Virus record (IMG/VR): IMGVR_UViG_3300018080_008436
Span: 412,249-476,248 of that record
Reading direction: 5' to 3' (one strand)
Length of the DNA stretch: 64,000 bases
Part shown: piece after piece, positions 734 to 51,447 of the stretch
Position numbering within the stretch: position 1 is the stretch's first letter
How the letters are laid out: each line of letters starts with the position of its first letter
Program-made: the position numbers and the translations under genes
Notes under the pieces: model-generated
The model's input: the letters and a program-made list of their open reading frames with translations, nothing else
The model's database searches: none
Told to the model about the DNA's origin: nothing

Positions 734-1121
734 AATTCCCATCAATACTTTGGATGCAAAGTCCTTAACATTTGGTATGGTGGCTCCAAACGAAACGGCC
801 CAAACCAATATCGTACAGCTTTATGTACCAGATGCCGCCGCAATTACCAATATTCGACTTGCATTAATCGATACTGGAGGTATAATGTTTGGATCTACTA
901 CTTTTGGAGTAGATAACAGATCGTTTATCGACAATAATGTAGTACCCGAATCATTTTTTCAAGGTGTTAGCGACAAAAGCGTAAATTCGCCTTACAATAT
1001 ATCAGTAGCAAACCTAAATAGATTAGCCAGTGAGTACATATATCTGAATGTGGATATCCCAATTGGTCAAACTTTTATCGCTGGAACAATAAGATATCAA
1101 TGGCTTTTTGACTATGCATAG
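696..1121 (+). CDS. hypothetical beta-rich protein
   Basis: 141-aa ORF overlapping the previous gene in an operon-like arrangement. Confidence 0.6.
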   Translation: MTPITYLIQNRTRIPINTLDAKSLTFGMVAPNETAQTNIVQLYVPDAAAITNIRLALIDTGGIMFGSTTFGVDNRSFIDNNVVPESFFQGVSDKSVNSPYNISVANLNRLASEYIYLNVDIPIGQTFIAGTIRYQWLFDYA

Positions 1122-1128
1122 GGGTAAT

Positions 1129-3135
1129 ATGAGAGTACAAATACAACCAACAAAAGACGAACAAGAGCTTTTTGAACTATTAAGGAATACAGTTAAGAAA
1201 GTGGCCCCTGGAACTTCATTAAGAGTTGCAGGCGGGTGGGTTCGTGACAATCTTCTAGGGAAGAAGTCAAATGACATTGATTTCATGGTTGACAACATGT
1301 CTGGAGAGCAAATTGCTCGATTAATCACAAATGAGCTTGGTCTAAGTGGACCCCATGTTGTTCAAGCAAACCCAGATGCCTCCAAACATTTGGAAACCGC
1401 TGGAGCAGAAATCCCCATATCAAATGGCAAGGTGTTTGATCTTGATTTTGCCATCGCAAGACAAGAAATTTACCATGATGACTCAAGAATTCCTGAGATC
1501 AAACCAGCGACTCCAGAAGAAGACGCTTTCAGAAGGGATTTGACCATTAATTCTATGTTCTACAATATTATGACTGGAGAACTGGAAGATTTCACTGGAA
1601 GAGGAATGGAAGATCTTAAGAGTAGAACAATTAAAACTCCTGAAGACCCACTGAAAACATTCAAAGATGACCCTTTAAGAATTTTCAGAACTATTCGTTT
1701 CGCTTCAAGGTACAATGGTAATATTGACCCAGAAACACTTTCTGCTATGAATAATCCAGAATTACATAGCGAAATTAGAGAAAAAGTGTCAAAAGAGAGG
1801 ATTCAAGAGGAACTCTTCAAAACAATGAAGGGACCAAATCCTCTGATGGCCATCAATTTGCTGAAAGAAACTGGCATATTCAGAGACATCATAGAAGATG
1901 CTGTCAAAGGTAGTAAATTTGAAGGAAAAATCGCTCCACTTGACATGGAGCAGAACAATCCTCATCATGAGCTAACGGTTTGGGGTCACACCCTAAAAGT
2001 TGTCGAAAATCTGTTGATGTACTATCCAGACACAGATCCTGAGAAACGTGCTATCATGATCCTAACAGCGGTTATGCATGATTTAGGGAAGCTTTATTAC
2101 GACATTCATGTCGATAAGGGGGATCAAACTTCTTACTATGGACATGCAGACGCTAGTGGTGAAATTGCTGAGATGATTATGCGTTACTTGAAGTTTAATA
2201 ACAAAATGATTGATCAAGTCTCCAAGATGTCAAAGCATCATATGAGAGTTCACTTGGTTGAAAATGACAAAAACTTAAGTGGCGAAGGAAAACGTTTGGC
2301 ATTTTTCAGAAAATTTATTAGAAAGATGCTGGCTGAAGGTATCGATGCGATGGACATAATGAATCTTTCTATTGCTGATGCTTATAGCAAAGGTCACAAA
2401 ATTGTTGATCCTTCAGTAGTTAAAAACTATCAACTTTTAAAAACTCAACTTGAGCAGGCTTTGGCTTCAATAAGTGTTGACCAAAATCAAAAGAAAGTTG
2501 TCCCAGTGTTGAATGGACGAGAAATTATGACTATTCTAAACATTAATCCTGGGTGCATGGTTGGTGATGCGACTAGATTTGTTTATGAGTTAATGGATGA
2601 GAATCCTAAAATCACCAAAGATGAGGCCGCAGAAAGATTAGTTGAAGAGTTCGCACACAAAATTGACAACGAAGAAAAAATTAGGCAAGCTTCTGCATGT
2701 CCAAAGCATCTTCTGTTTAGCAAGATTGATGAAATAAAAGAAGCGATTAATGATGAGAATTGTGACAGAGCAATTACAATTATGACCACTCTCAAGAAAG
2801 AGAATGAAGATGACGAAAGTGTATATGCAGAAATTGCGAACCGTATGCTTGATGTCTTGCTTATAGACCGTTCGAAAAGGAACTTTGAACTTCTAGGTTA
2901 TGTATTTGACAAAGCAATAGATAACTTCTTTGATGTAGAAGTTTGCATACCTGTTCTTGGAATCTTGTTACTCTTAAAGACAGGTACAAAAGAAGAGCAT
3001 ATAGAAACATTATGTGAAAGAATGAAGAACATGGCGAATGATAAATTACAAGTCATGTTAAAGAAATTACCTGATGATGCTTATCATAAGAAATTCATAA
3101 AAAGGTTAAAGAATGGAAGATGTAACTGCAAATGA
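1129..3135 (+). CDS. cca: class II CCA-adding tRNA nucleotidyltransferase with HD domain and C-terminal extension
   Basis: VAGGWVRDNLLG..DIDF, RRDLTINSM and DDPLRIFRTIRFA motifs; HH..VWGHT and MHDLGK HD domain; LNGREIM...PG..VG tail; start MRVQ after AGGGG. Confidence 0.9.
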   Translation: MRVQIQPTKDEQELFELLRNTVKKVAPGTSLRVAGGWVRDNLLGKKSNDIDFMVDNMSGEQIARLITNELGLSGPHVVQANPDASKHLETAGAEIPISNGKVFDLDFAIARQEIYHDDSRIPEIKPATPEEDAFRRDLTINSMFYNIMTGELEDFTGRGMEDLKSRTIKTPEDPLKTFKDDPLRIFRTIRFASRYNGNIDPETLSAMNNPELHSEIREKVSKERIQEELFKTMKGPNPLMAINLLKETGIFRDIIEDAVKGSKFEGKIAPLDMEQNNPHHELTVWGHTLKVVENLLMYYPDTDPEKRAIMILTAVMHDLGKLYYDIHVDKGDQTSYYGHADASGEIAEMIMRYLKFNNKMIDQVSKMSKHHMRVHLVENDKNLSGEGKRLAFFRKFIRKMLAEGIDAMDIMNLSIADAYSKGHKIVDPSVVKNYQLLKTQLEQALASISVDQNQKKVVPVLNGREIMTILNINPGCMVGDATRFVYELMDENPKITKDEAAERLVEEFAHKIDNEEKIRQASACPKHLLFSKIDEIKEAINDENCDRAITIMTTLKKENEDDESVYAEIANRMLDVLLIDRSKRNFELLGYVFDKAIDNFFDVEVCIPVLGILLLLKTGTKEEHIETLCERMKNMANDKLQVMLKKLPDDAYHKKFIKRLKNGRCNCK

Positions 3136-3721
3136 AGTCGCTTCATACGTTGAGGCATTAAATGTAGCCAATATGGATGGCGAGATAAAGAAACCAGAAG
3201 TGCTTGGAGTTTTGCAATCTCTTCCATCCCCAAATCACATCAAAAGATACTTATCAAATGAAGAAGCAAGAGTCTTGTTTGAAAGCATCCGATGGATTTG
3301 GAAAGAAACAAGTGGTAAAGATATTAGTGAGACATTTAATTTCGAGCCTGCTCCAGAATCATTGCTAGGAAATTACTGGATGCTAAGGAATGGTCTGATC
3401 TTTCATGGTATCAACCATTATGGCATCATTAAAAGAAATATGACGCTCTTTTCTAACGTCCTGAAGTTAGAGCCGTTTGTACTGCATCAGAAGCTTGCAG
3501 GCATACCACAAGACCTAATTAAGTACGTTATAGACAATGGGGGGATGAGAATCTTCGTTACGGCTGACAAAAGAGCATATTTCCAAATGAATGATCAGGT
3601 TTATGCCAATTGGGGTAGGGCCAAAGTTAAAGGACTGGACTTCGGAAACAAAGTGGTCAAACTTGTTGACCCCACTACCCGATTTGACGGTTGGAACTCT
3701 GGAATTACCTTAAAACTCTAG
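3113..3721 (+). CDS. hypothetical protein
   Basis: 202-aa ORF overlapping the cca stop. Confidence 0.7.
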   Translation: MEDVTANEVASYVEALNVANMDGEIKKPEVLGVLQSLPSPNHIKRYLSNEEARVLFESIRWIWKETSGKDISETFNFEPAPESLLGNYWMLRNGLIFHGINHYGIIKRNMTLFSNVLKLEPFVLHQKLAGIPQDLIKYVIDNGGMRIFVTADKRAYFQMNDQVYANWGRAKVKGLDFGNKVVKLVDPTTRFDGWNSGITLKL

Positions 3722-5475
3722 TTCATAAAGAACGGGTCATCATCATCGTCGTCGTCATCAAATTCTACAGGTGGCAGATCTTCCTCAGGATGTTTTCTCT
3801 TAGGTGGCAATGGTTCGTCTTTCGTTGAAGGGCCAAACAATGATGCAAGTTCTGCTTCAAAATCTACATCATCCCATATCAACTCATCAAGATCTTCTTC
3901 TGCACCAGGAGAAAGTGGGTCTGATGGATCAACTTCTGCACCATCGATAGCATCTCCAGTACCTTCATCAATGTCACCAGCATCTTTGTCTTCTTCATCT
4001 GTTTCGGTTTCCCAGAAACCAGTTTCATCCAACTGATCTTTGAATCGATTCAGAATTTCTTTCGCTTCTTCTTGATCACTAATAATATAACTTGATGCTT
4101 CGAAAAGCTCTTGTACTGGTCCAGCACCCATATATCCAACCAATCCTAATCCAACGATATCTTCTGGTTTACATTGCATGAATCTTCTGAAGTTCTCAGG
4201 ACCAATCTGCATTTGCATTTGCTCATTTACCAATTCATCTGATTCTTTTAGAATGGCAATCGCCTCTTCCATCTCCAAAGGACGTTGTCCTCTGCTTGCT
4301 CTAGACTCATTGTCCAATTGGTGATCAGTTGCTTTTGAGAAAATACCCTTGGTAAGTTCCTGACAAATAATAATAAAGTTCATACCTTGAGCTACAGTGT
4401 TACCTTCATCATCATTATGACTCCAACCAGTTCCTTTTTGGCCTAACTGATCAGCCATCATCCTAACCATCTCTGGATCGATGTAATAAAAATGCTGACA
4501 CATCAAATTAGAGAACTTTTCATAAAGTCCTAAGAGTTGAGGATTAATGTCATTGATCGCACCTTGGACTTCTTCCATCTCAGTTACATCAAATAATTCA
4601 TTAAGTCCTGCGCCTTGAGCCAATGAATTCATGATGATGCGTTTGTTAATTTCACCTTCAAGTTCTGGAGTTATTTCAATATCTACTTCTGGGAAGTCTT
4701 CTTCACCTGAAGGACCCATCTCTTCCATATATTTGATTTCTAACTCATCCCTATCAACATTCCATTTACGAGAGATAACGTCTTTTGCGAGGTCCATCAA
4801 CTGCTCTTCATTTCCTTGTTCCAAAGCTTGGATTTCTCTAAGGAGTCCAAGAATCTGCATCATAACTTGTTGAATGTTAGTGTTTACAGGGATATCCTTC
4901 TCTTCTGCAATATTCGTAATATATTCATAGTTTGCGCGAGCTAGTTCATCACCATAATGAGAAAGCACTGGATTTTGAGAAAGGATATTGTTTTGAGGAA
5001 TATCTTGCCAGAAATTTCTTACACCTCTTTGTACTGAGGCATCGTAATCAGCGGCGGCGACCTTCTGTTCAAGAAGACGGATTTCGTAACCACTTATCTT
5101 TTTTTTTAACTCCGAAGTAATGGTCGGCAAGTTATCAGGGGATACTTGTGCGGCCAATGGAAGATCTTCTTCTGGTTCTTCAGCTTTAGGTTTTGGTTGT
5201 ACGATAGGTTTAGGATTACGTGGTCTTCTTTTCCCAGGTTTTCCAGGCTTAGTCTTTTCTCCTGGTGTAGTTCTGGGTTTGGTTGTTGGAGCGGCTGGAG
5301 CAGGTCCTGATCTTTCGGTTGATGGAGCAGGTTCAGCTTCTCTTACCATATCTTCTGCTTGAACAACTAAATTGCCATCTTCGTCTAGCCATCCAGCTTT
5401 TTTACCAAATTCTTCCCAATCTTTTTGAGACAATTTAACGGTCTTTTTGCCATTGGCGTTTTTTATAATTTTCAT
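3718..5475 (-). CDS. acidic hypothetical protein with shared N-terminal leader module; candidate internal virion protein
   Basis: 585 aa; begins MKIIKNANGKKTVKLSQKDWEEFGKKAGWL; AGG-N19-GAA motif upstream. Confidence 0.75.
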   Translation of the reverse strand: MKIIKNANGKKTVKLSQKDWEEFGKKAGWLDEDGNLVVQAEDMVREAEPAPSTERSGPAPAAPTTKPRTTPGEKTKPGKPGKRRPRNPKPIVQPKPKAEEPEEDLPLAAQVSPDNLPTITSELKKKISGYEIRLLEQKVAAADYDASVQRGVRNFWQDIPQNNILSQNPVLSHYGDELARANYEYITNIAEEKDIPVNTNIQQVMMQILGLLREIQALEQGNEEQLMDLAKDVISRKWNVDRDELEIKYMEEMGPSGEEDFPEVDIEITPELEGEINKRIIMNSLAQGAGLNELFDVTEMEEVQGAINDINPQLLGLYEKFSNLMCQHFYYIDPEMVRMMADQLGQKGTGWSHNDDEGNTVAQGMNFIIICQELTKGIFSKATDHQLDNESRASRGQRPLEMEEAIAILKESDELVNEQMQMQIGPENFRRFMQCKPEDIVGLGLVGYMGAGPVQELFEASSYIISDQEEAKEILNRFKDQLDETGFWETETDEEDKDAGDIDEGTGDAIDGAEVDPSDPLSPGAEEDLDELIWDDVDFEAELASLFGPSTKDEPLPPKRKHPEEDLPPVEFDDDDDDDDPFFMN

Positions 5476-5537: not shown

Positions 5538-6488
5538 TTATGGATTTACTTCTAGCCCCATTCTTGCATATTCTTCTAGATTTATCGCTGGATTTGAGGC
5601 TTTGACTTTTACAAAAGTCGAATGGTCACATTCTTTCCACAAATCTTCTCTATCCTCTCCCCCTTCAAAGATTATCATATCATAATCTATGTGTGCGGGA
5701 GTCATCCACTCTCCATTATGCCAAATCTGGAAATCCACATCTGCATCTCTATATTGGTTCAACTTGTTGATATGGACTTCTGCATAAAGGAAATCTGGTG
5801 GTTTTTCAATTTTTAATGTATATTTATTATAGCCTGCTGGGACTATCCAAGGGTTTTGGAAAACAAAATACAAATCTTTTGAAACTTTTAACAAATCACC
5901 TCTTTGTTGAACCCAATTCCCCTTTTCATACCAATTCTTATTTTGAGAGAATGAAACAATTCCCCTTCTAACAACATTTTGCTTATCCTTATATGTCCCA
6001 TAATATCCTGATTTAGCAATGGGACTGTAAAAAGTCAGATGACTTCCATCGGCCTCCACTTGTCTTCGAGCGTTATTAAAGGCTCTAACTTCTTCATCTT
6101 CCTCTTCTTCAATAGGATCAGCTTCTTGAGGAGCGTTCGGATCAGCTTCTTGAGGAGCGTTCGGATCAGCTTCTTGAGGAGCGTTCGGATCTATCCCTGC
6201 CAGAAGTTGAGCATTTCGTTCTCTCTCCAATAATTCAAAAAGATCATCTGGTTCATCTATGTCTGGAATTTTCATTTTTCCATCTTTCAACGCATCGTCT
6301 ATTTGTTCTGGAGTTAGAGGTTTTTTATAACCTTTTATCTTCCCTTGTTTATCAAGTACTGGTTGCCTTTCTTCTTGCGTCCAGCCTATTTCTTTTAGCC
6401 TATTCTGATATTCTTTACATTCTATATAGTCTGCTCTTTGAGCCTCTTTAAGAAAAGAATAAAATTCAAATTGCTTGTACCAACTCAT
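5538..6488 (-). CDS. hypothetical protein with WY-type leader (MSWYKQ...LKEAQ) and DPNAPQEA repeats
   Basis: 316-aa ORF with AGGAGA SD. Confidence 0.75.
   Translation of the reverse strand: MSWYKQFEFYSFLKEAQRADYIECKEYQNRLKEIGWTQEERQPVLDKQGKIKGYKKPLTPEQIDDALKDGKMKIPDIDEPDDLFELLERERNAQLLAGIDPNAPQEADPNAPQEADPNAPQEADPIEEEEDEEVRAFNNARRQVEADGSHLTFYSPIAKSGYYGTYKDKQNVVRRGIVSFSQNKNWYEKGNWVQQRGDLLKVSKDLYFVFQNPWIVPAGYNKYTLKIEKPPDFLYAEVHINKLNQYRDADVDFQIWHNGEWMTPAHIDYDMIIFEGGEDREDLWKECDHSTFVKVKASNPAINLEEYARMGLEVNP
6115..6191. repeat. 3 x 24-bp perfect coding tandem repeat (DPNAPQEA)
   Basis: ggatcagcttcttgaggagcgttc x3. Confidence 0.9.
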
Positions 6489-7371: not shown

Positions 7372-7947
7372 TTATTTATTCTCGCAGACATCTATTAACT
7401 CATAGATTAAATCTTTTTGATCATCTGTGAATTTCCATCGGACATTAACATTTTTGTCTGCCCAGTCTTTTGCGCTATTACCTTTCTCTTGCCCCATACT
7501 GACCCAATCAGCCACCATTTCAGCTATGTCAATGTCCCCCATCTTAGTGCCATCAATCATTTTTTCGGGTGGTTTGTCTCTATCATTTCTGTTGATGAGA
7601 TCGACCGTTTCAGATGAATGAAACTCTGGATGATGCCTATTACTTTTTACATGATGCTCAGTAGCTTTATTCATCTTTTCATCCATCCCATCTGGCGGTT
7701 CCCAGTCTACACCATCATCTTTGCATTTATAACTCCATGTTACATAAAGATATGGTTCATACTCTGGATCTTCAAATTTACTATCGTCATGATGACTGGC
7801 CTGTTCGATAAGGTCTTCGAATTTGTCATCGTAGTCAGCAATCTTTTTGCAGTATTTCTGAACTCGCTTGATATGTTCTCTAGTTCTTTTTTCAAAGAAC
7901 TCTTCTATTTCTTTCTTCTCACTTTTCGCTGTCCTGATTAATTTCAT
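7372..7947 (-). CDS. HD-like phosphohydrolase (DUF5662-like) with MKLIRTA leader
   Basis: RTREHI..V, HHDDSKF, HHVKSNRHHPEFH and EMVADW motifs; start 7947 after GGAGG. Confidence 0.65.
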   Translation of the reverse strand: MKLIRTAKSEKKEIEEFFEKRTREHIKRVQKYCKKIADYDDKFEDLIEQASHHDDSKFEDPEYEPYLYVTWSYKCKDDGVDWEPPDGMDEKMNKATEHHVKSNRHHPEFHSSETVDLINRNDRDKPPEKMIDGTKMGDIDIAEMVADWVSMGQEKGNSAKDWADKNVNVRWKFTDDQKDLIYELIDVCENK

Positions 7948-7965
7948 TGTAATACCTCCATGATT

Positions 7966-8001
7966 ATTATACAAAAAACCCCTTGTAGAGACAAGGGGTT
8001 T
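7966..8001 (-). promoter_or_regulatory. terminator hairpin with an embedded sigma70-type promoter (TTGTCT-17-TATAAT)
   Basis: AACCCCTTGT/ACAAGGGGTT stem plus U-tract; -35 at 7989-7994, -10 at 7966-7971. Confidence 0.7.
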
Positions 8002-8018
8002 AGATGTACACAGAAAGC

Positions 8019-8333
8019 TTATTTTTCTGGTTTGGGTTGTGGAGGTTGGGGTCTGCCTTTTCCATGGCCTCTCATGCCTTTTCCAGGGCCATTACCATGT
8101 CTTCCCCTCATGCCTTCACGATGACGCTTCATCCTTTCTTTCATCATAGCAGTTAACTCTGAACGATCTAACTTACCATCTTTGTCAACGTCAAAGTTTT
8201 CCATGACTCTGTCCAATACCTTTTCCAAACACTTCTCTGGACTTGGACGTTCAGGGCGTTCGGGTCTCTCGGTTTCTTGGGCTGAAAGAGTGCAGGCAAA
8301 AACTAGGGCGAGTAATACGATTAATGCTTTCAT
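8019..8333 (-). CDS. secreted EF-hand protein
   Basis: Signal peptide MKALIVLLALVFACTLSA; EF-hand loop FDVDKDGKLDRSEL; Gly/Pro/Arg-rich tail; start 8333 after AAGGAG. Confidence 0.75.
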   Translation of the reverse strand: MKALIVLLALVFACTLSAQETERPERPERPSPEKCLEKVLDRVMENFDVDKDGKLDRSELTAMMKERMKRHREGMRGRHGNGPGKGMRGHGKGRPQPPQPKPEK

Positions 8334-8370
8334 AATAAGATCTCCTTTATTAAGCAATGAATTTGTTAAC

Positions 8371-8385
8371 GCAAGTGCTGTGCCA
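8371..8385 (-). promoter_or_regulatory. sigma54 (RpoN) -24/-12 promoter
   Basis: TGGCAC-AGCAC-TTGC matches the -24/-12 consensus spacing, 38 nt upstream of the EF-hand start. Confidence 0.7.
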
Positions 8386-8459
8386 AATGTTTTATTGGGT
8401 AAATGGTCACTATAGTGCGCAAATATTAGAATTTTGGTAAAAATAGTGCGCAAAATATG

Positions 8460-8795
8460 CTATCTAAACTCATTTCCCCATTTGTCGAGGTTTTCGTATG
8501 GTATTGTAAACAAATAATCTTCAACTTTGCTTGAACGTGTCCCAAAAGAGACATCATAATATATCCCATCACATTTGACTAAAGCGTGGTTAACTCCATC
8601 CTTTCTACAAACAACAACATCTGCTTTGTATCCCGCTTCTCTTAATGCTTTGCAATACCTTCCACACAGATTACTGCAATCATTGGCATTGGGAATCTTC
8701 TTTTCTTTATTAAGTGACCAGAAAATATCTGGTAATGGTATTTTTTGAAAATTTAGTAATTTGTATAAGAACGATTTGAACCATTTCATGATCAC
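8460..8795 (-). CDS. small transglutaminase/papain-fold-like protein
   Basis: DCSN...NHALV...YYDV putative Cys-His-Asp arrangement. Confidence 0.5.
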   Translation of the reverse strand: MIMKWFKSFLYKLLNFQKIPLPDIFWSLNKEKKIPNANDCSNLCGRYCKALREAGYKADVVVCRKDGVNHALVKCDGIYYDVSFGTRSSKVEDYLFTIPYENLDKWGNEFR

Positions 8796-9213: not shown

Positions 9214-9495
9214 TTAACCAAGAGTATCTTGAACTCTGTCCTCTCGTAACCAAAATTCTCCACTTCCACCAACAGGTTTCAATTTATATTGTGTCCTGCC
9301 GAACATTTTACGTTTACTAAGAACTTCAACAGGAAAGAAAACAGAAGTTGACCCTCTTCCAATTTCATAAAACTGAGCATATTTTATTTGTCCAACTTCG
9401 CTCTCATCCAGTTCCATCTCTTCTGGCACTTTTCTTTCTGGCTCTTCCTTCTGTGGCATAGGAGGAATTACTTGAGCCGCCTTCATTATTTTCAT
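9214..9495 (-). CDS. hypothetical protein with MKIMKAAQ leader
   Basis: 93-aa ORF coupled to its neighbours. Confidence 0.65.
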   Translation of the reverse strand: MKIMKAAQVIPPMPQKEEPERKVPEEMELDESEVGQIKYAQFYEIGRGSTSVFFPVEVLSKRKMFGRTQYKLKPVGGSGEFWLREDRVQDTLG

Positions 9496-9920
9496 TATCC
9501 ATCTCCTTTTATTATCTCGAATCCATTATCTAACCAACCTGCAACTGGAACTCCTTCAACAGGAGAGATGCCCATGCCAAATTTCAAAGAGACGACATCA
9601 TATCCAAGCATTCTCAAAAGAACCAAAGCTTGACTGGAAGTATGACCAACATAACAAACAAGAAGAATCTTTTTGTCTTTAGGTAATTTATCCAGGTTCT
9701 CTTTTTCTAATAAATCTAGCCAGAAAATGTTCTCTGCTCCTTCGATATGCCCTTCAGCAAAGTCTTCGGGCTTTCTTATGTCTAAGATGAAGAAGTTATC
9801 CAAGCCTTTTTCCTTCAACTCAACAGGAGTGATGTAGTTCCAAGTATCGTCTGTTTTGTCAATGAACTCTTTCAGCTTTTCCGTGAAAGTTAGATCGCAT
9901 GATATTTTTATGAGCTTCAT
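9495..9920 (-). CDS. rhodanese-domain protein with MKLIKIS leader
   Basis: ILDIRKPEDFAEGHIEGAENI; active-site loop VCYVGHTS; LRMLGY...GW. Confidence 0.85.
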   Translation of the reverse strand: MKLIKISCDLTFTEKLKEFIDKTDDTWNYITPVELKEKGLDNFFILDIRKPEDFAEGHIEGAENIFWLDLLEKENLDKLPKDKKILLVCYVGHTSSQALVLLRMLGYDVVSLKFGMGISPVEGVPVAGWLDNGFEIIKGDG

Positions 9921-9958
9921 TCACCCTTCCTTAATTCATAAGTATAGTCTTATTATAC

Positions 9959-10709: not shown

Positions 10710-10843
10710 GATTTAACCTCTTTATGCTACTTACCATAAGGACATTATACAGATAACCTTGATTCATTTTTCTCTTGTAAAAAGCAACATTTTTCCACCT
10801 GGACTCTTACTATCAGAGATTCTGGTTTTCAAGCAAAATCGAC

Positions 10844-51190: not shown

Positions 51191-51298
51191 TTAGTAAAAA
51201 TTACTAACCCTTGAGCCACACTTTAGTAAAAATTACTAACGAAAAATTAAAGATTAGTAAAAATTACTAATTTGCCATTTTTTAGTAAAAATTACTAA
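51191..51298. repeat. four identical 17-bp palindromes TTAGTAA-AAA-TTACTAA
   Basis: Copies at 51191, 51223, 51254 and 51282. Confidence 0.95.
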
Positions 51299-51447
51299 TT
51301 TGCAAAAATCTTGCATTTTTTCTTGGAATCAGAAAATGTGGTTGTATAATGACAATATGCTTTCGAAACCAATTGTTTTGAAAGTGAACCCTTCCTAGCG
51401 GGGTATAGGCTAGAGAGCGAGAGACATAATAAAAGGAGAAAAGTATC

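What the first reader, a model, noticed from the sequence alone, without database searches (positions are those of the whole stretch)
8019..8460. Host-type sigma54 promoter with paired upstream sites driving a secreted EF-hand gene
Seen: TGGCAC-N5-TTGC at 8371-8385 and two direct repeats ATAGTGCGCAAA at 8412-8423 and 8443-8454, 31 bp (about three helical turns) apart. The gene has a signal peptide, one EF-hand and its own terminator. Known: sigma54 promoters need enhancer-binding proteins bound to upstream sites. Inference: a host-derived moron still wired to a host signalling pathway. The protein style recalls PVC-superphylum secreted EF-hand proteins, a weak host clue. The repeats are closer than typical enhancers.
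Basis: partly seen in the sequence, partly recalled or inferred. Interest (0 to 1): 0.6.

Follow-up and report, generated by a model that had tools for sequence, protein, structure and literature searches.

The report
Sigma-54 promoter in a megaphage
A giant phage of about 0.5 Mb carries a textbook sigma-54 promoter with two repeated upstream sites in front of a small secreted calcium-binding protein gene, which suggests the phage leaves this gene's expression to a signalling pathway of its still unknown host.

Summary
TGGCAC-N5-TTGC lies at 8385..8371 on the minus strand. Two exact 12-mers sit 31 bp apart and extend to 20-nt units. Downstream are a Shine-Dalgarno site, a 104-aa signal-peptide plus single EF-hand gene (8333..8019) and a strong terminator.

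The window is the end of a 476-kb record (524-kb contig) of a megaphage with 59 tRNAs and four sigma-70-family genes. It has no rpoN and no enhancer-binding protein.

The core motif is unique in the genome. Only 0.4% of 2,159 composition-matched control motifs give an exact hit in such a promoter context.

Two independent sites add support:
- A sigma-54-like site precedes the phage's Hsp20 gene. In a 78%-identical relative its -24/-12 blocks are conserved, while the spacer and the would-be sigma-70 -10 box changed.
- A perfect site precedes a small ORF in a related 398-kb phage.

I therefore rate a functional, host-dependent sigma-54 promoter as the best explanation (about 0.55).

Not supported:
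- Recent host origin. The closest homologue is 47% identical, GC3 equals the phage mean, and 43 cellular homologues lack the motif.
- A free-standing moron. The gene ends a five-gene unit and read-through is possible.

The host, the transcription start and the protein that binds the repeats remain unknown.

The parts
8435..8454 (-). Distal repeat unit: TTTGCGCACTAT-tttt-ACCA (12-mer core 8443-8454). Candidate binding site for an activator, centred about -85 to -89 from the predicted start.
   Evidence: The core occurs only twice in 476 kb.
8404..8423 (-). Proximal repeat unit: TTTGCGCACTAT-agtg-ACCA (12-mer core 8412-8423), 31 bp from the distal unit, centred about -54 to -58.
   Evidence: Chance of such a close 12-mer repeat in this spacer is about 8e-4.
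8371..8385 (-). Sigma-54 core promoter TGGCAC-N5-TTGC (-24 GG at 8384-8383, -12 GC at 8372-8371).
   Evidence: unique in the genome; 0.37% of 2,159 control motifs give an exact hit in a promoter context.
8357..8361 (-). Predicted transcription start, about 12 nt downstream of the -12 GC (inferred, not measured). It would give a 5' UTR of about 26 nt.
   Evidence: Inference from the standard geometry of sigma-54 promoters. No RNA data exist.
8341..8348 (-). Shine-Dalgarno site AAAGGAGA, with GGAG 8 nt before the ATG.
   Evidence: AAGGAG-type sites are the phage's usual ribosome-binding sites.
8019..8333 (-). Gene for a 104-aa secreted protein (P0001). It has a signal peptide (residues 1-19, cleavage after LSA), a Pro/Glu/Arg linker, one canonical EF-hand (loop residues 48-59 = 8157-8192) and a basic Gly/Pro/Arg/His/Met tail.
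   Evidence: EF-hand matches to secretagogin, calbindin and calmodulin. (homologues with the same build).
7976..8001 (-). Intrinsic terminator (11-bp stem, T-run) ending the EF-hand transcript.
   Evidence: -20.5 kcal/mol, z = -6.8.
7966..7973 (-). TGTATAAT phage-type promoter of the next gene (DUF5662, 7947..7372), overlapping the terminator's T-run. It marks the start of a separate unit.
   Evidence: enriched motif, 108 genome copies of GTATAAT. (DUF5662).
8460..8789 (-). Upstream 109-aa gene of unknown function. Its stop codon lies 5 nt before the distal repeat and no terminator follows it.
   Evidence: no Pfam match.
9952..9958 (-). GTATAAT promoter before the rhodanese gene. It is the nearest upstream phage-type promoter, from which read-through could reach the EF-hand gene.
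   Evidence: No terminator-like site on the minus strand between 9958 and 8334.

Best explanation
The 126-nt spacer upstream of the EF-hand gene is a sigma-54 (RpoN)-dependent promoter region.

Proposed mechanism (inferred):
1. Host core RNA polymerase carrying host sigma-54 binds TGGCAC-N5-TTGC (8385..8371) as a closed complex.
2. A host AAA+ enhancer-binding protein, probably bound to the two 20-nt direct repeat units on the same DNA face (31 bp, three helical turns apart), opens the complex.
3. Transcription starts near 8359 and ends at the terminator 8001..7976.
4. The product is a small exported Ca2+-binding protein.

A basal level of the same mRNA may come from read-through from the phage promoter at 9958. 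The sigma-54 promoter would then add a conditional burst that depends on a host signal.

Shown: the sequence elements, their uniqueness and their statistical excess in promoter context; the absence of phage rpoN and EBP genes; and the build of the protein.

Inferred: sigma-54 binding, the start site, that the repeats bind an EBP, and which signal is sensed.
For: - The core is exact, correctly spaced and unique in 476 kb.
- It lies in non-coding DNA 37 nt before an SD-led ATG.
- Only 0.37% of 2,159 composition-matched control motifs give an exact hit in such a context, and 0.8% give two hits at up to one mismatch.
- A second site, TGGCATgtgttTTGCT, lies 46 nt before the phage's Hsp20 gene at record position 301608..301594. 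In a diverged relative (protein 78% identical, L123) the blocks TTGGCATG and TTTTGCTTTTTAG are unchanged. The two spacer bases and four of the six bases of the would-be sigma-70 -10 box differ.
- A related 398-kb megaphage has TGGCACGggggTTGCA 27 nt before an SD-led 62-aa ORF, again with repeated elements upstream. No control motif had exact in-context hits in both genomes.
- No phage-type promoter (TGTATAAT, or TTGACA...TGcTATGTT) is present in the spacer.
- The spacer has no RNA structure signal (z = 0.09) and no Rfam match. This favours a DNA-level element.
- The phage has no RNA polymerase beta subunit and relies on host core enzyme.
- Small heat-shock genes are sigma-54-controlled in E. 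coli ibpB (PMC2831329). They are predicted to be so in Planctomycetota and Bacteroidota (PMC12316311).
Against: - There are no transcript data, so the start site and RpoN dependence are untested.
- The host is unknown, so the presence of rpoN is assumed.
- The repeats are direct, have only a 6-8-bp palindromic core, and lie closer to the promoter than classical enhancers.
- I could match them to no known EBP site. The combination of repeat plus promoter was found nowhere else in JGI metagenomes. It was at chance level in 401 Planctomycetota and 401 Verrucomicrobiota genomes.
- Three other related megaphages have no TGGCAY-N5-TTGC at all. The second genome was looked at because it had hits.
- Bases flanking the core (A after TGGCAC, G after TTGC) are not the preferred ones.
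- Read-through from the promoter at 9958 could express the gene without any internal promoter.
- All five assemblies of this phage are identical across this region, so there is no comparative footprint for this site itself.
Confidence: 0.55

Rival explanations
1. The -24/-12 match is a chance or non-functional sequence. The EF-hand gene would simply be the last gene of a five-gene unit (rhodanese, g93, g158, g109, EF-hand) read from the GTATAAT promoter at 9958 and ended by the terminator at 8001..7976. The repeats would bind some other phage or host regulator, or do nothing.
For: About 0.5 exact matches are expected somewhere in 476 kb. No terminator lies between 9958 and the gene. Three related megaphages have no such motif. 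Homologues elsewhere lack it.
Against: The location-specific probability is low (0.37%). A 126-nt spacer is unusual in a unit whose other genes abut or overlap. The exact 12-mer repeats are unlikely by chance (about 8e-4). The Hsp20 site shows a sigma-54-type conservation pattern.
Confidence: 0.25
2. The repeats themselves are promoters or operators of the sigma-70 type. Each unit holds a -10-like box (TATAGT, TATTTT) read by host sigma-70 or by one of the four phage sigma factors, and the TGGCAC element would lie in the 5' UTR.
For: TATAGT at 8414..8409 is a 5-of-6 match to TATAAT. TTGCGC-N17-TCTAAT is a weak -35/-10 pair. The phage encodes four sigma-70-family proteins of unknown specificity.
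Against: The consensus scan finds no sigma-70-like promoter on this strand in the spacer. There is no TG extension and no usable -35. The unit occurs nowhere else in the genome at up to 3 mismatches in a promoter-like place, whereas the phage's real promoter motifs recur tens of times.
Confidence: 0.08
3. Sigma-54 holoenzyme binds the site but is not activated. The stable closed complex would act as a roadblock or sink that lowers read-through into the EF-hand gene, and the repeats would bind a different factor.
For: Sigma-54 holoenzyme binds DNA in an inactive state, and many bound sites in E. coli are not linked to detectable transcription (PMC4591121). The site sits in the path of possible read-through.
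Against: The geometry is that of a normal promoter (SD and ATG 37 nt downstream, repeats upstream). The Hsp20 and G001 sites follow terminators or non-coding DNA rather than sitting inside operons.
Confidence: 0.07

Closest known systems
Classical enhancer-dependent sigma-54 promoters (for example E. coli glnAp2 with two NtrC sites about three helical turns apart; my own knowledge)
   Same: It has the -24 GG and -12 GC elements with the exact spacing. It has two upstream sites about three helical turns apart on one DNA face. The gene sits downstream with a short leader.
   Different: The promoter is carried by a phage that encodes neither RpoN nor an activator. The sites are direct 20-nt repeats rather than clear dyads. 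They are centred near -55 and -87 instead of about -100 to -150. No IHF-like site was seen between them and the promoter.
Phage genes placed under a host two-component regulator: cyanophage genes with Pho boxes bound by host PhoB (PMC10976474)
   Same: A lytic phage wires accessory genes to a host signalling pathway through host-type cis elements. Expression then depends on host physiology.
   Different: Those are sigma-70-type promoters with a response-regulator box. Here the promoter class itself (sigma-54) makes expression strictly activator-dependent. The cyanophage cases have transcript and gel-shift evidence, and this one has none. That paper also warns that predicted boxes in phage genomes are unreliable.
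Sigma-54 control of small heat-shock genes (E. coli ibpB, PMC2831329; predicted heat-shock regulon in Planctomycetota and Bacteroidota, PMC12316311)
   Same: The same phage has a conserved sigma-54-like site before its own Hsp20 gene.
   Different: The gene is phage-borne. The upstream conserved block (TTTGTCTCAC-N2-ATATGTGTCAAA) is unrelated to the EF-hand repeats, so the two genes would answer to different activators.
Secreted EF-hand proteins of Verrucomicrobiota and Planctomycetota (uncharacterised families)
   Same: They share the signal peptide ending AQ[ED], the Pro-rich linker (ERPERPERPSPE is shared with P0002), the DxDKDGKL loop and the Gly/Pro/Arg tail.
   Different: The phage protein has one EF-hand where most relatives have two to four. 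Identity is at most 47%. The closest full-length look-alikes (P0013, P0041) come from low-GC contigs of unknown organisms.
Phage morons (for example lambda bor/lom-type promoter-gene-terminator cassettes; my own knowledge)
   Same: It is a small accessory gene with a candidate promoter of its own and a strong terminator, lying between unrelated phage genes.
   Different: There is no compositional anomaly at third codon positions. Insertion relative to kin could not be demonstrated. No terminator lies upstream, so it is not insulated from the preceding genes.

Membership tests
Sigma-54 (RpoN)-dependent promoter | Conserved -24 (TGGCAC) and -12 (TTGC) elements with GG and GC exactly 10 nt apart | tested here: met
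   TGGCACagcacTTGC at 8385..8371, 10 of 10 core positions.
Sigma-54 (RpoN)-dependent promoter | Non-coding position, correct orientation, short distance to a translated gene, and occurrence beyond chance | tested here: met
   It lies 37 nt before an SD-led ATG. Only 0.37% of 2,159 control motifs give an exact hit in such a context.
Sigma-54 (RpoN)-dependent promoter | Transcription start about 12 nt downstream of the -12 GC | not testable with these tools
   No RNA runs hold this phage.
Sigma-54 (RpoN)-dependent promoter | Dependence on RpoN and on an AAA+ enhancer-binding protein | not testable with these tools
   The phage record has no Sigma54_DBD or Sigma54_CBD match. Its PF00158 hits are ClpB-like, RecD2, RuvB and DnaX. 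The host is unknown. 48 kb of the 524-kb contig could not be read.
Sigma-54 (RpoN)-dependent promoter | Conservation of the -24/-12 blocks in relatives, with free spacer positions | tested here: inconclusive
   For this site all five assemblies are identical and no diverged copy exists. The pattern is met for the phage's Hsp20 site.
Enhancer (UAS) for a bacterial enhancer-binding protein | Two or more activator sites upstream, phased on one DNA face, usually dyad-symmetric, usually about 80-150 bp upstream | tested here: inconclusive
   Two 20-nt units lie 31 bp apart, so the phasing is met. They are direct repeats with only a TGCGCA/TTGCGCAC palindromic core and are centred near -55 and -87. 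They match no known site, and the repeat-plus-promoter combination was found nowhere outside the phage.
EF-hand calcium-binding protein | Helix-loop-helix with the 12-residue loop D-x-[DN]-x-[DN]-G-x-[ILV]-x-x-x-E, and a Pfam match above threshold | tested here: met
   The loop is DVDKDGKLDRSE. EF-hand_1 scores 29.7 bits against a cut-off of 25.4. PDB sequence matches include secretagogin, calbindin and calmodulin over residues 36-64.
EF-hand calcium-binding protein | EF-hands occur in pairs within one chain | tested here: not met
   Only one EF-hand is detected. Pairing would need dimerisation, which was not tested.
Phage moron (horizontally acquired promoter-gene-terminator cassette) | Own promoter and own terminator, insulated from neighbours | tested here: inconclusive
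   The terminator is clear and a candidate promoter is present. No terminator separates the gene from the four genes upstream.
Phage moron (horizontally acquired promoter-gene-terminator cassette) | Composition or codon use unlike the rest of the phage, and close cellular donors | tested here: not met
   GC3 is 37.1% against a phage mean of 36.9%. The overall GC of 45.7% is explained by the Gly/Pro/Arg content. The best homologue is 47% identical.
Phage moron (horizontally acquired promoter-gene-terminator cassette) | Present as an insertion between genes that are adjacent in related phages | tested here: inconclusive
   Related megaphages share only DUF5662. None of the other 12 neighbouring proteins is found near it.

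The most novel reading that the evidence does not exclude
Some megaphages place a few accessory genes behind strictly activator-dependent sigma-54 promoters. Here these are a secreted Ca2+-binding protein and a small heat-shock protein, and in a relative a 62-aa protein. The infected cell's own enhancer-binding proteins (stress or nutrient sensors) would then decide when these phage genes fire. That would be a natural use of host sigma-54 circuits by a virulent-type giant phage. I found no such case in the searched literature.
Probability: 0.45. Interest if true: 0.65.

Novelty: new variant of a known kind. Interest (0 to 1): 0.5.

Why it matters
Sigma-54 promoters are silent until a signal-activated ATPase opens them. 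A phage gene behind one is therefore expressed only when the host senses a particular condition.

If this is confirmed, giant phages do more than replace host sigma-70 with their own sigma factors (this phage has four). They would also tap the host's enhancer-dependent signalling to time accessory functions such as a periplasmic calcium binder and a chaperone.

It would also give a practical clue to the host. The host must have rpoN and an activator that recognises TTTGCGCACTAT-N4-ACCA. In addition, it would supply a compact natural cassette for studying enhancer action at short range.

Tried and rejected
1. Shared upstream site between the EF-hand and Hsp20 promoters. TTTGCGC[AC]C occurs only three times on that strand, all near these two promoters. 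I rejected the link. The Hsp20 copy sits next to a tRNA-His-like 3' end and terminator, and it is not conserved in the relative L123.

2. Phage-encoded activator. All PF00158 hits are ClpB-like, ClpX, RecD2, RuvB or DnaX. There is no RpoN.

3. Promoter conservation in homologues. None of 43 loci has a -24/-12 element. The closest homologue, L013, has only TGGCAT-N5-TTGT, with the -12 C lost, and I did not count it.

4. Synteny or insertion test. No shared neighbours were found in related phages.

5. RNA element in the spacer. The fold z-score is 0.09 and there is no Rfam match.

6. Expression data. Only DNA runs hold the phage.

7. Host search:
   - TerL is about 25% identical to anything isolated.
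   - The sigma factors reach no equivalog threshold.
   - The Hsp20 look-alikes are mostly viral.
   - The repeat-plus-promoter pattern was found only in the phage in JGI metagenomes. It was at chance level in 802 PVC genomes.
   - The 48 kb that IMG/VR trimmed from the 524-kb contig could not be read.

8. Table 4 was named once for a neighbouring gene on L013 because of in-frame stops. It did not clear them and nothing rests on it.

9. Relatives of the G001 62-aa ORF and of Hsp20 in viral contigs. Only the same phages were found.

Full report
**What the window is**

The 64-kb window is the last part of a 476,248-bp virus record. The same sequence sits in a 524,692-bp metagenome contig and a 523,871-bp ENA contig, so the IMG/VR record is a 'provirus' cut of a longer contig.

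- The record carries about 616 ORFs, mostly on the minus strand. It has 59 tRNA genes and a tmRNA.
- The window holds a portal protein, a head protease, a large terminase and a ribonucleotide reductase.
- TerL is only about 25% identical to any isolated phage.
- The phage has four sigma-70-family genes but no RNA polymerase beta subunit. It therefore redirects host core polymerase.
- Its own promoter motifs are TGTATAAT(A) and, in the first 114 kb, TTGACA followed by TGcTATGTT. AAGGAG-type ribosome-binding sites are common.
- The samples are sediment and seawater metagenomes. The JGI samples belong to a set in which Planctomycetes genomes were binned (PMC7449369).

**The observation**

- TGGCACagcacTTGC lies at 8385..8371. 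It is the only exact match in the window and in the whole record.
- TTTGCGCACTAT lies at 8454..8443 and 8423..8412, the only two copies in the record. The repeat extends to 20-nt units of the form TTTGCGCACTAT-N4-ACCA.
- AAAGGAGA lies at 8348..8341.
- The ORF runs from the ATG at 8333 to the stop at 8019.
- A strong terminator lies at 8001..7976 (-20.5 kcal/mol, z = -6.8).
- Directly after it, TGTATAAT starts the next unit, a DUF5662 gene.

**The protein**

P0001 is 104 aa. It has these parts:

- a signal peptide ending LSA|QE
- a Pro/Glu/Arg linker
- one canonical EF-hand, loop DVDKDGKLDRSE (Pfam 29.7 bits against a cut-off of 25.4)
- a basic Gly/Pro/Arg/His/Met tail

The word-index search found one relative only. 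I therefore ran the exhaustive search, which gave 581 relatives at E<=1e-3, none above 47% identity.

Full-length look-alikes share the same build (P0013 of 92 aa, P0041 of 101 aa, P0140, P0002). In named genomes the family is dominated by Verrucomicrobiota and Planctomycetota, with some Xanthomonas. The Atlas look-alikes agree.

**Is the sigma-54 match more than chance?**

Base composition predicts about 0.5 exact matches somewhere in the record. Location is therefore what counts.

I scored every hit with GG and GC fixed and at most one mismatch. I asked whether each lies in non-coding DNA 12-90 nt before an SD-led start of an ORF of at least 60 codons. I did the same for all 2,159 motifs made by permuting the letters within the two blocks.

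- The true motif has 12 hits in this phage, 2 of them in context. Controls average 8.7 hits and 0.11 in context.
- 0.8% of controls reach two in-context hits.
- 0.37% of controls give an exact in-context hit.

The 12-mer direct repeat is independently unlikely, about 8e-4 for this spacer.

**Two further sites**

The second in-context hit in this phage is TGGCATgtgttTTGCT at record position 301608..301594.

- It follows a tRNA-His cluster and a terminator, and it lies 46 nt before an Hsp20 gene (P0151, Pfam 68 bits).
- A 546-bp metagenome contig encodes a 78%-identical Hsp20 together with its upstream region.
- In the alignment, TTGGCATG and TTTTGCTTTTTAG are unchanged and both spacer bases differ.
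- The hexamer that could serve as a sigma-70 -10 box in this phage (TAAAAT, 17 nt after TTGGCA) reads TTTAGG in the relative.
- That substitution pattern fits sigma-54 and not sigma-70.
- An upstream block, TTTGTCTCAC-N2-ATATGTGTCAAA, is also conserved.

A related 398-kb megaphage (its DUF5662 is 62% identical) has TGGCACGggggTTGCA 27 nt before an SD-led 62-aa ORF. Upstream it carries CGGTAGCG twice, around a TTGAAATTTCAA palindrome. No control motif gave exact in-context hits in both genomes.

Caveat: I fetched that genome because it had hits. Three other related megaphages have no TGGCAY-N5-TTGC at all. The trait is therefore patchy, as expected if the hosts differ.

**Who would read the promoter?**

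Neither this phage nor four relatives encode RpoN domains. All matches to the sigma-54 activator ATPase family are ClpB-like, ClpX, RecD2, RuvB or DnaX. Any activity therefore needs host sigma-54 and a host activator. The 48 kb trimmed from the contig could not be read.

**What speaks against a free-standing, host-derived moron**

- On the minus strand, GTATAAT promoters lie at 10750, 9958 and 7972. No terminator lies between 9958 and the EF-hand gene. The gene can therefore also be read as the fifth and last gene of the rhodanese unit. Its 126-nt spacer stands out from the abutting genes upstream.
- GC3 equals the phage mean, and the nearest homologue is 47% identical.
- None of 43 homologue loci has a -24/-12 element.
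- The neighbours are not conserved in related phages.
- All assemblies of this phage are identical in this region. The site itself therefore has no comparative footprint.

**Alternatives for the spacer**

- It has no RNA structure signal and no Rfam match.
- No sigma-70-like promoter is called on this strand. The -10-like boxes inside the repeats lack a TG extension and a -35. The unit recurs nowhere else.
- The repeats resemble no activator site that I can name.
- The repeat-plus-promoter pattern is found only in this phage in JGI metagenomes. It is at chance level in 802 PVC genomes.

**Host**

The host is unresolved. Canonical -35/-10 promoters and frequent Shine-Dalgarno sites argue against a Bacteroidota-type host (my own knowledge of that phylum's promoters).

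A recent survey predicts sigma-54 control of the heat-shock set, including small heat-shock proteins, mainly in Planctomycetota and Bacteroidota (PMC12316311). Together with the PVC-type EF-hand family and the Planctomycetes bins in the same samples, this gives a weak but convergent pointer to a Planctomycetota host. I rate it a lead only.

**Comparison with what is known**

- The element works like a classical enhancer-dependent sigma-54 promoter. It meets the sequence-level membership tests. The functional tests were not possible.
- As biology, it is closest to cyanophage genes driven by host PhoB (PMC10976474). That paper also warns that predicted regulator boxes in phage genomes often fail experimentally.
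- Sigma-54 control of an sHSP gene has a precedent in E. coli ibpB (PMC2831329).
- Sigma-54 holoenzyme also binds many sites without detectable transcription (PMC4591121). That keeps a non-productive reading open.
- Searches of the paper library found no natural sigma-54 promoter described in a lytic or giant phage. This is absence in a limited library, not proof.

**Verdict**

- Observation: confirmed.
- Interpretation: partly supported.
- Functional host-dependent sigma-54 promoter: about 0.55.
- The repeats are its activator sites: roughly 0.35-0.4.
- Recent host origin of the cassette: not supported.
- Interest: moderate (0.5). It is a plausible and testable case of a giant phage tapping host enhancer-dependent signalling, but it rests on sequence evidence alone.

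Noticed in passing
Outside the window: virus record G000 301594-301608 (-), locus L094; relative L123: A sigma-54-like site, TGGCATgtgttTTGCT, lies 46 nt before the phage's Hsp20 gene. Its -24/-12 blocks and an upstream block (TTTGTCTCAC-N2-ATATGTGTCAAA) are conserved in a 78%-identical relative, while the spacer and the would-be sigma-70 -10 box changed.
   Followed up: yes
L091 (related 398-kb megaphage G001, 71757-71771, -): A perfect TGGCACG-N4-TTGCA lies 27 nt before an SD-led 62-aa ORF of unknown function. Upstream, CGGTAGCG occurs twice around a TTGAAATTTCAA palindrome. A second exact match in that genome (L093) lies inside a coding frame.
   Followed up: partly
window about 51191-51300; also G000 1464, 15474, 31694: The palindromic motif TTAGTAAAAATTACTAA is repeated four times, about 28-32 bp apart, in an intergenic region of the window. 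It recurs at three other places in the genome. It looks like an operator array for a phage regulator.
   Followed up: no
L064 and L067, 4001-4435 and 5534-5662: In two related phage contigs the DUF5662 homologue is split by about 1.1 kb of inserted DNA. This may be an intron, an intein or a mobile element.
   Followed up: no
L013 (contig of the closest EF-hand homologue P0013, 26% GC), 1452-3965 (-): The neighbouring ankyrin-like gene has 11 in-frame stops under tables 11 and 4, so they are not TGA. This suggests a TAA/TAG-recoded organism or phage. Upstream of the EF-hand homologue is TGGCAT-N5-TTGT, a degenerate -24/-12-like string.
   Followed up: partly
window 6168-6191: A 24-nt tandem-repeat copy-number difference inside the 316-aa gene is the only difference between the ENA assembly (L005) and the window over 6.3 kb.
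   Followed up: no
whole record G000 against contig Ga0180433_10000003: IMG/VR classes the record as a provirus and trims 48,444 bp from one end of a 524,692-bp contig. For a phage with 59 tRNAs, a tmRNA, ClpB-like, RuvB and DnaX genes, this may be a false host call. The trimmed part could not be read.
   Followed up: partly
G000 2.5-114 kb against the rest of the genome: There are two promoter classes. TTGACA followed by TGcTATGTT occurs only in the first quarter of the genome. TGTATAAT(A) occurs throughout (108 copies of GTATAAT, 82 on the minus strand). This fits an early host-sigma-70 class and a class read by one of the four phage sigma factors.
   Followed up: partly
window 9495-9920 (-) and 1108-3135 (+): The unit that ends with the EF-hand gene begins with a rhodanese-domain protein. 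Nearby is a 675-aa CCA-adding/poly(A) polymerase-type enzyme with an HD domain.
   Followed up: no
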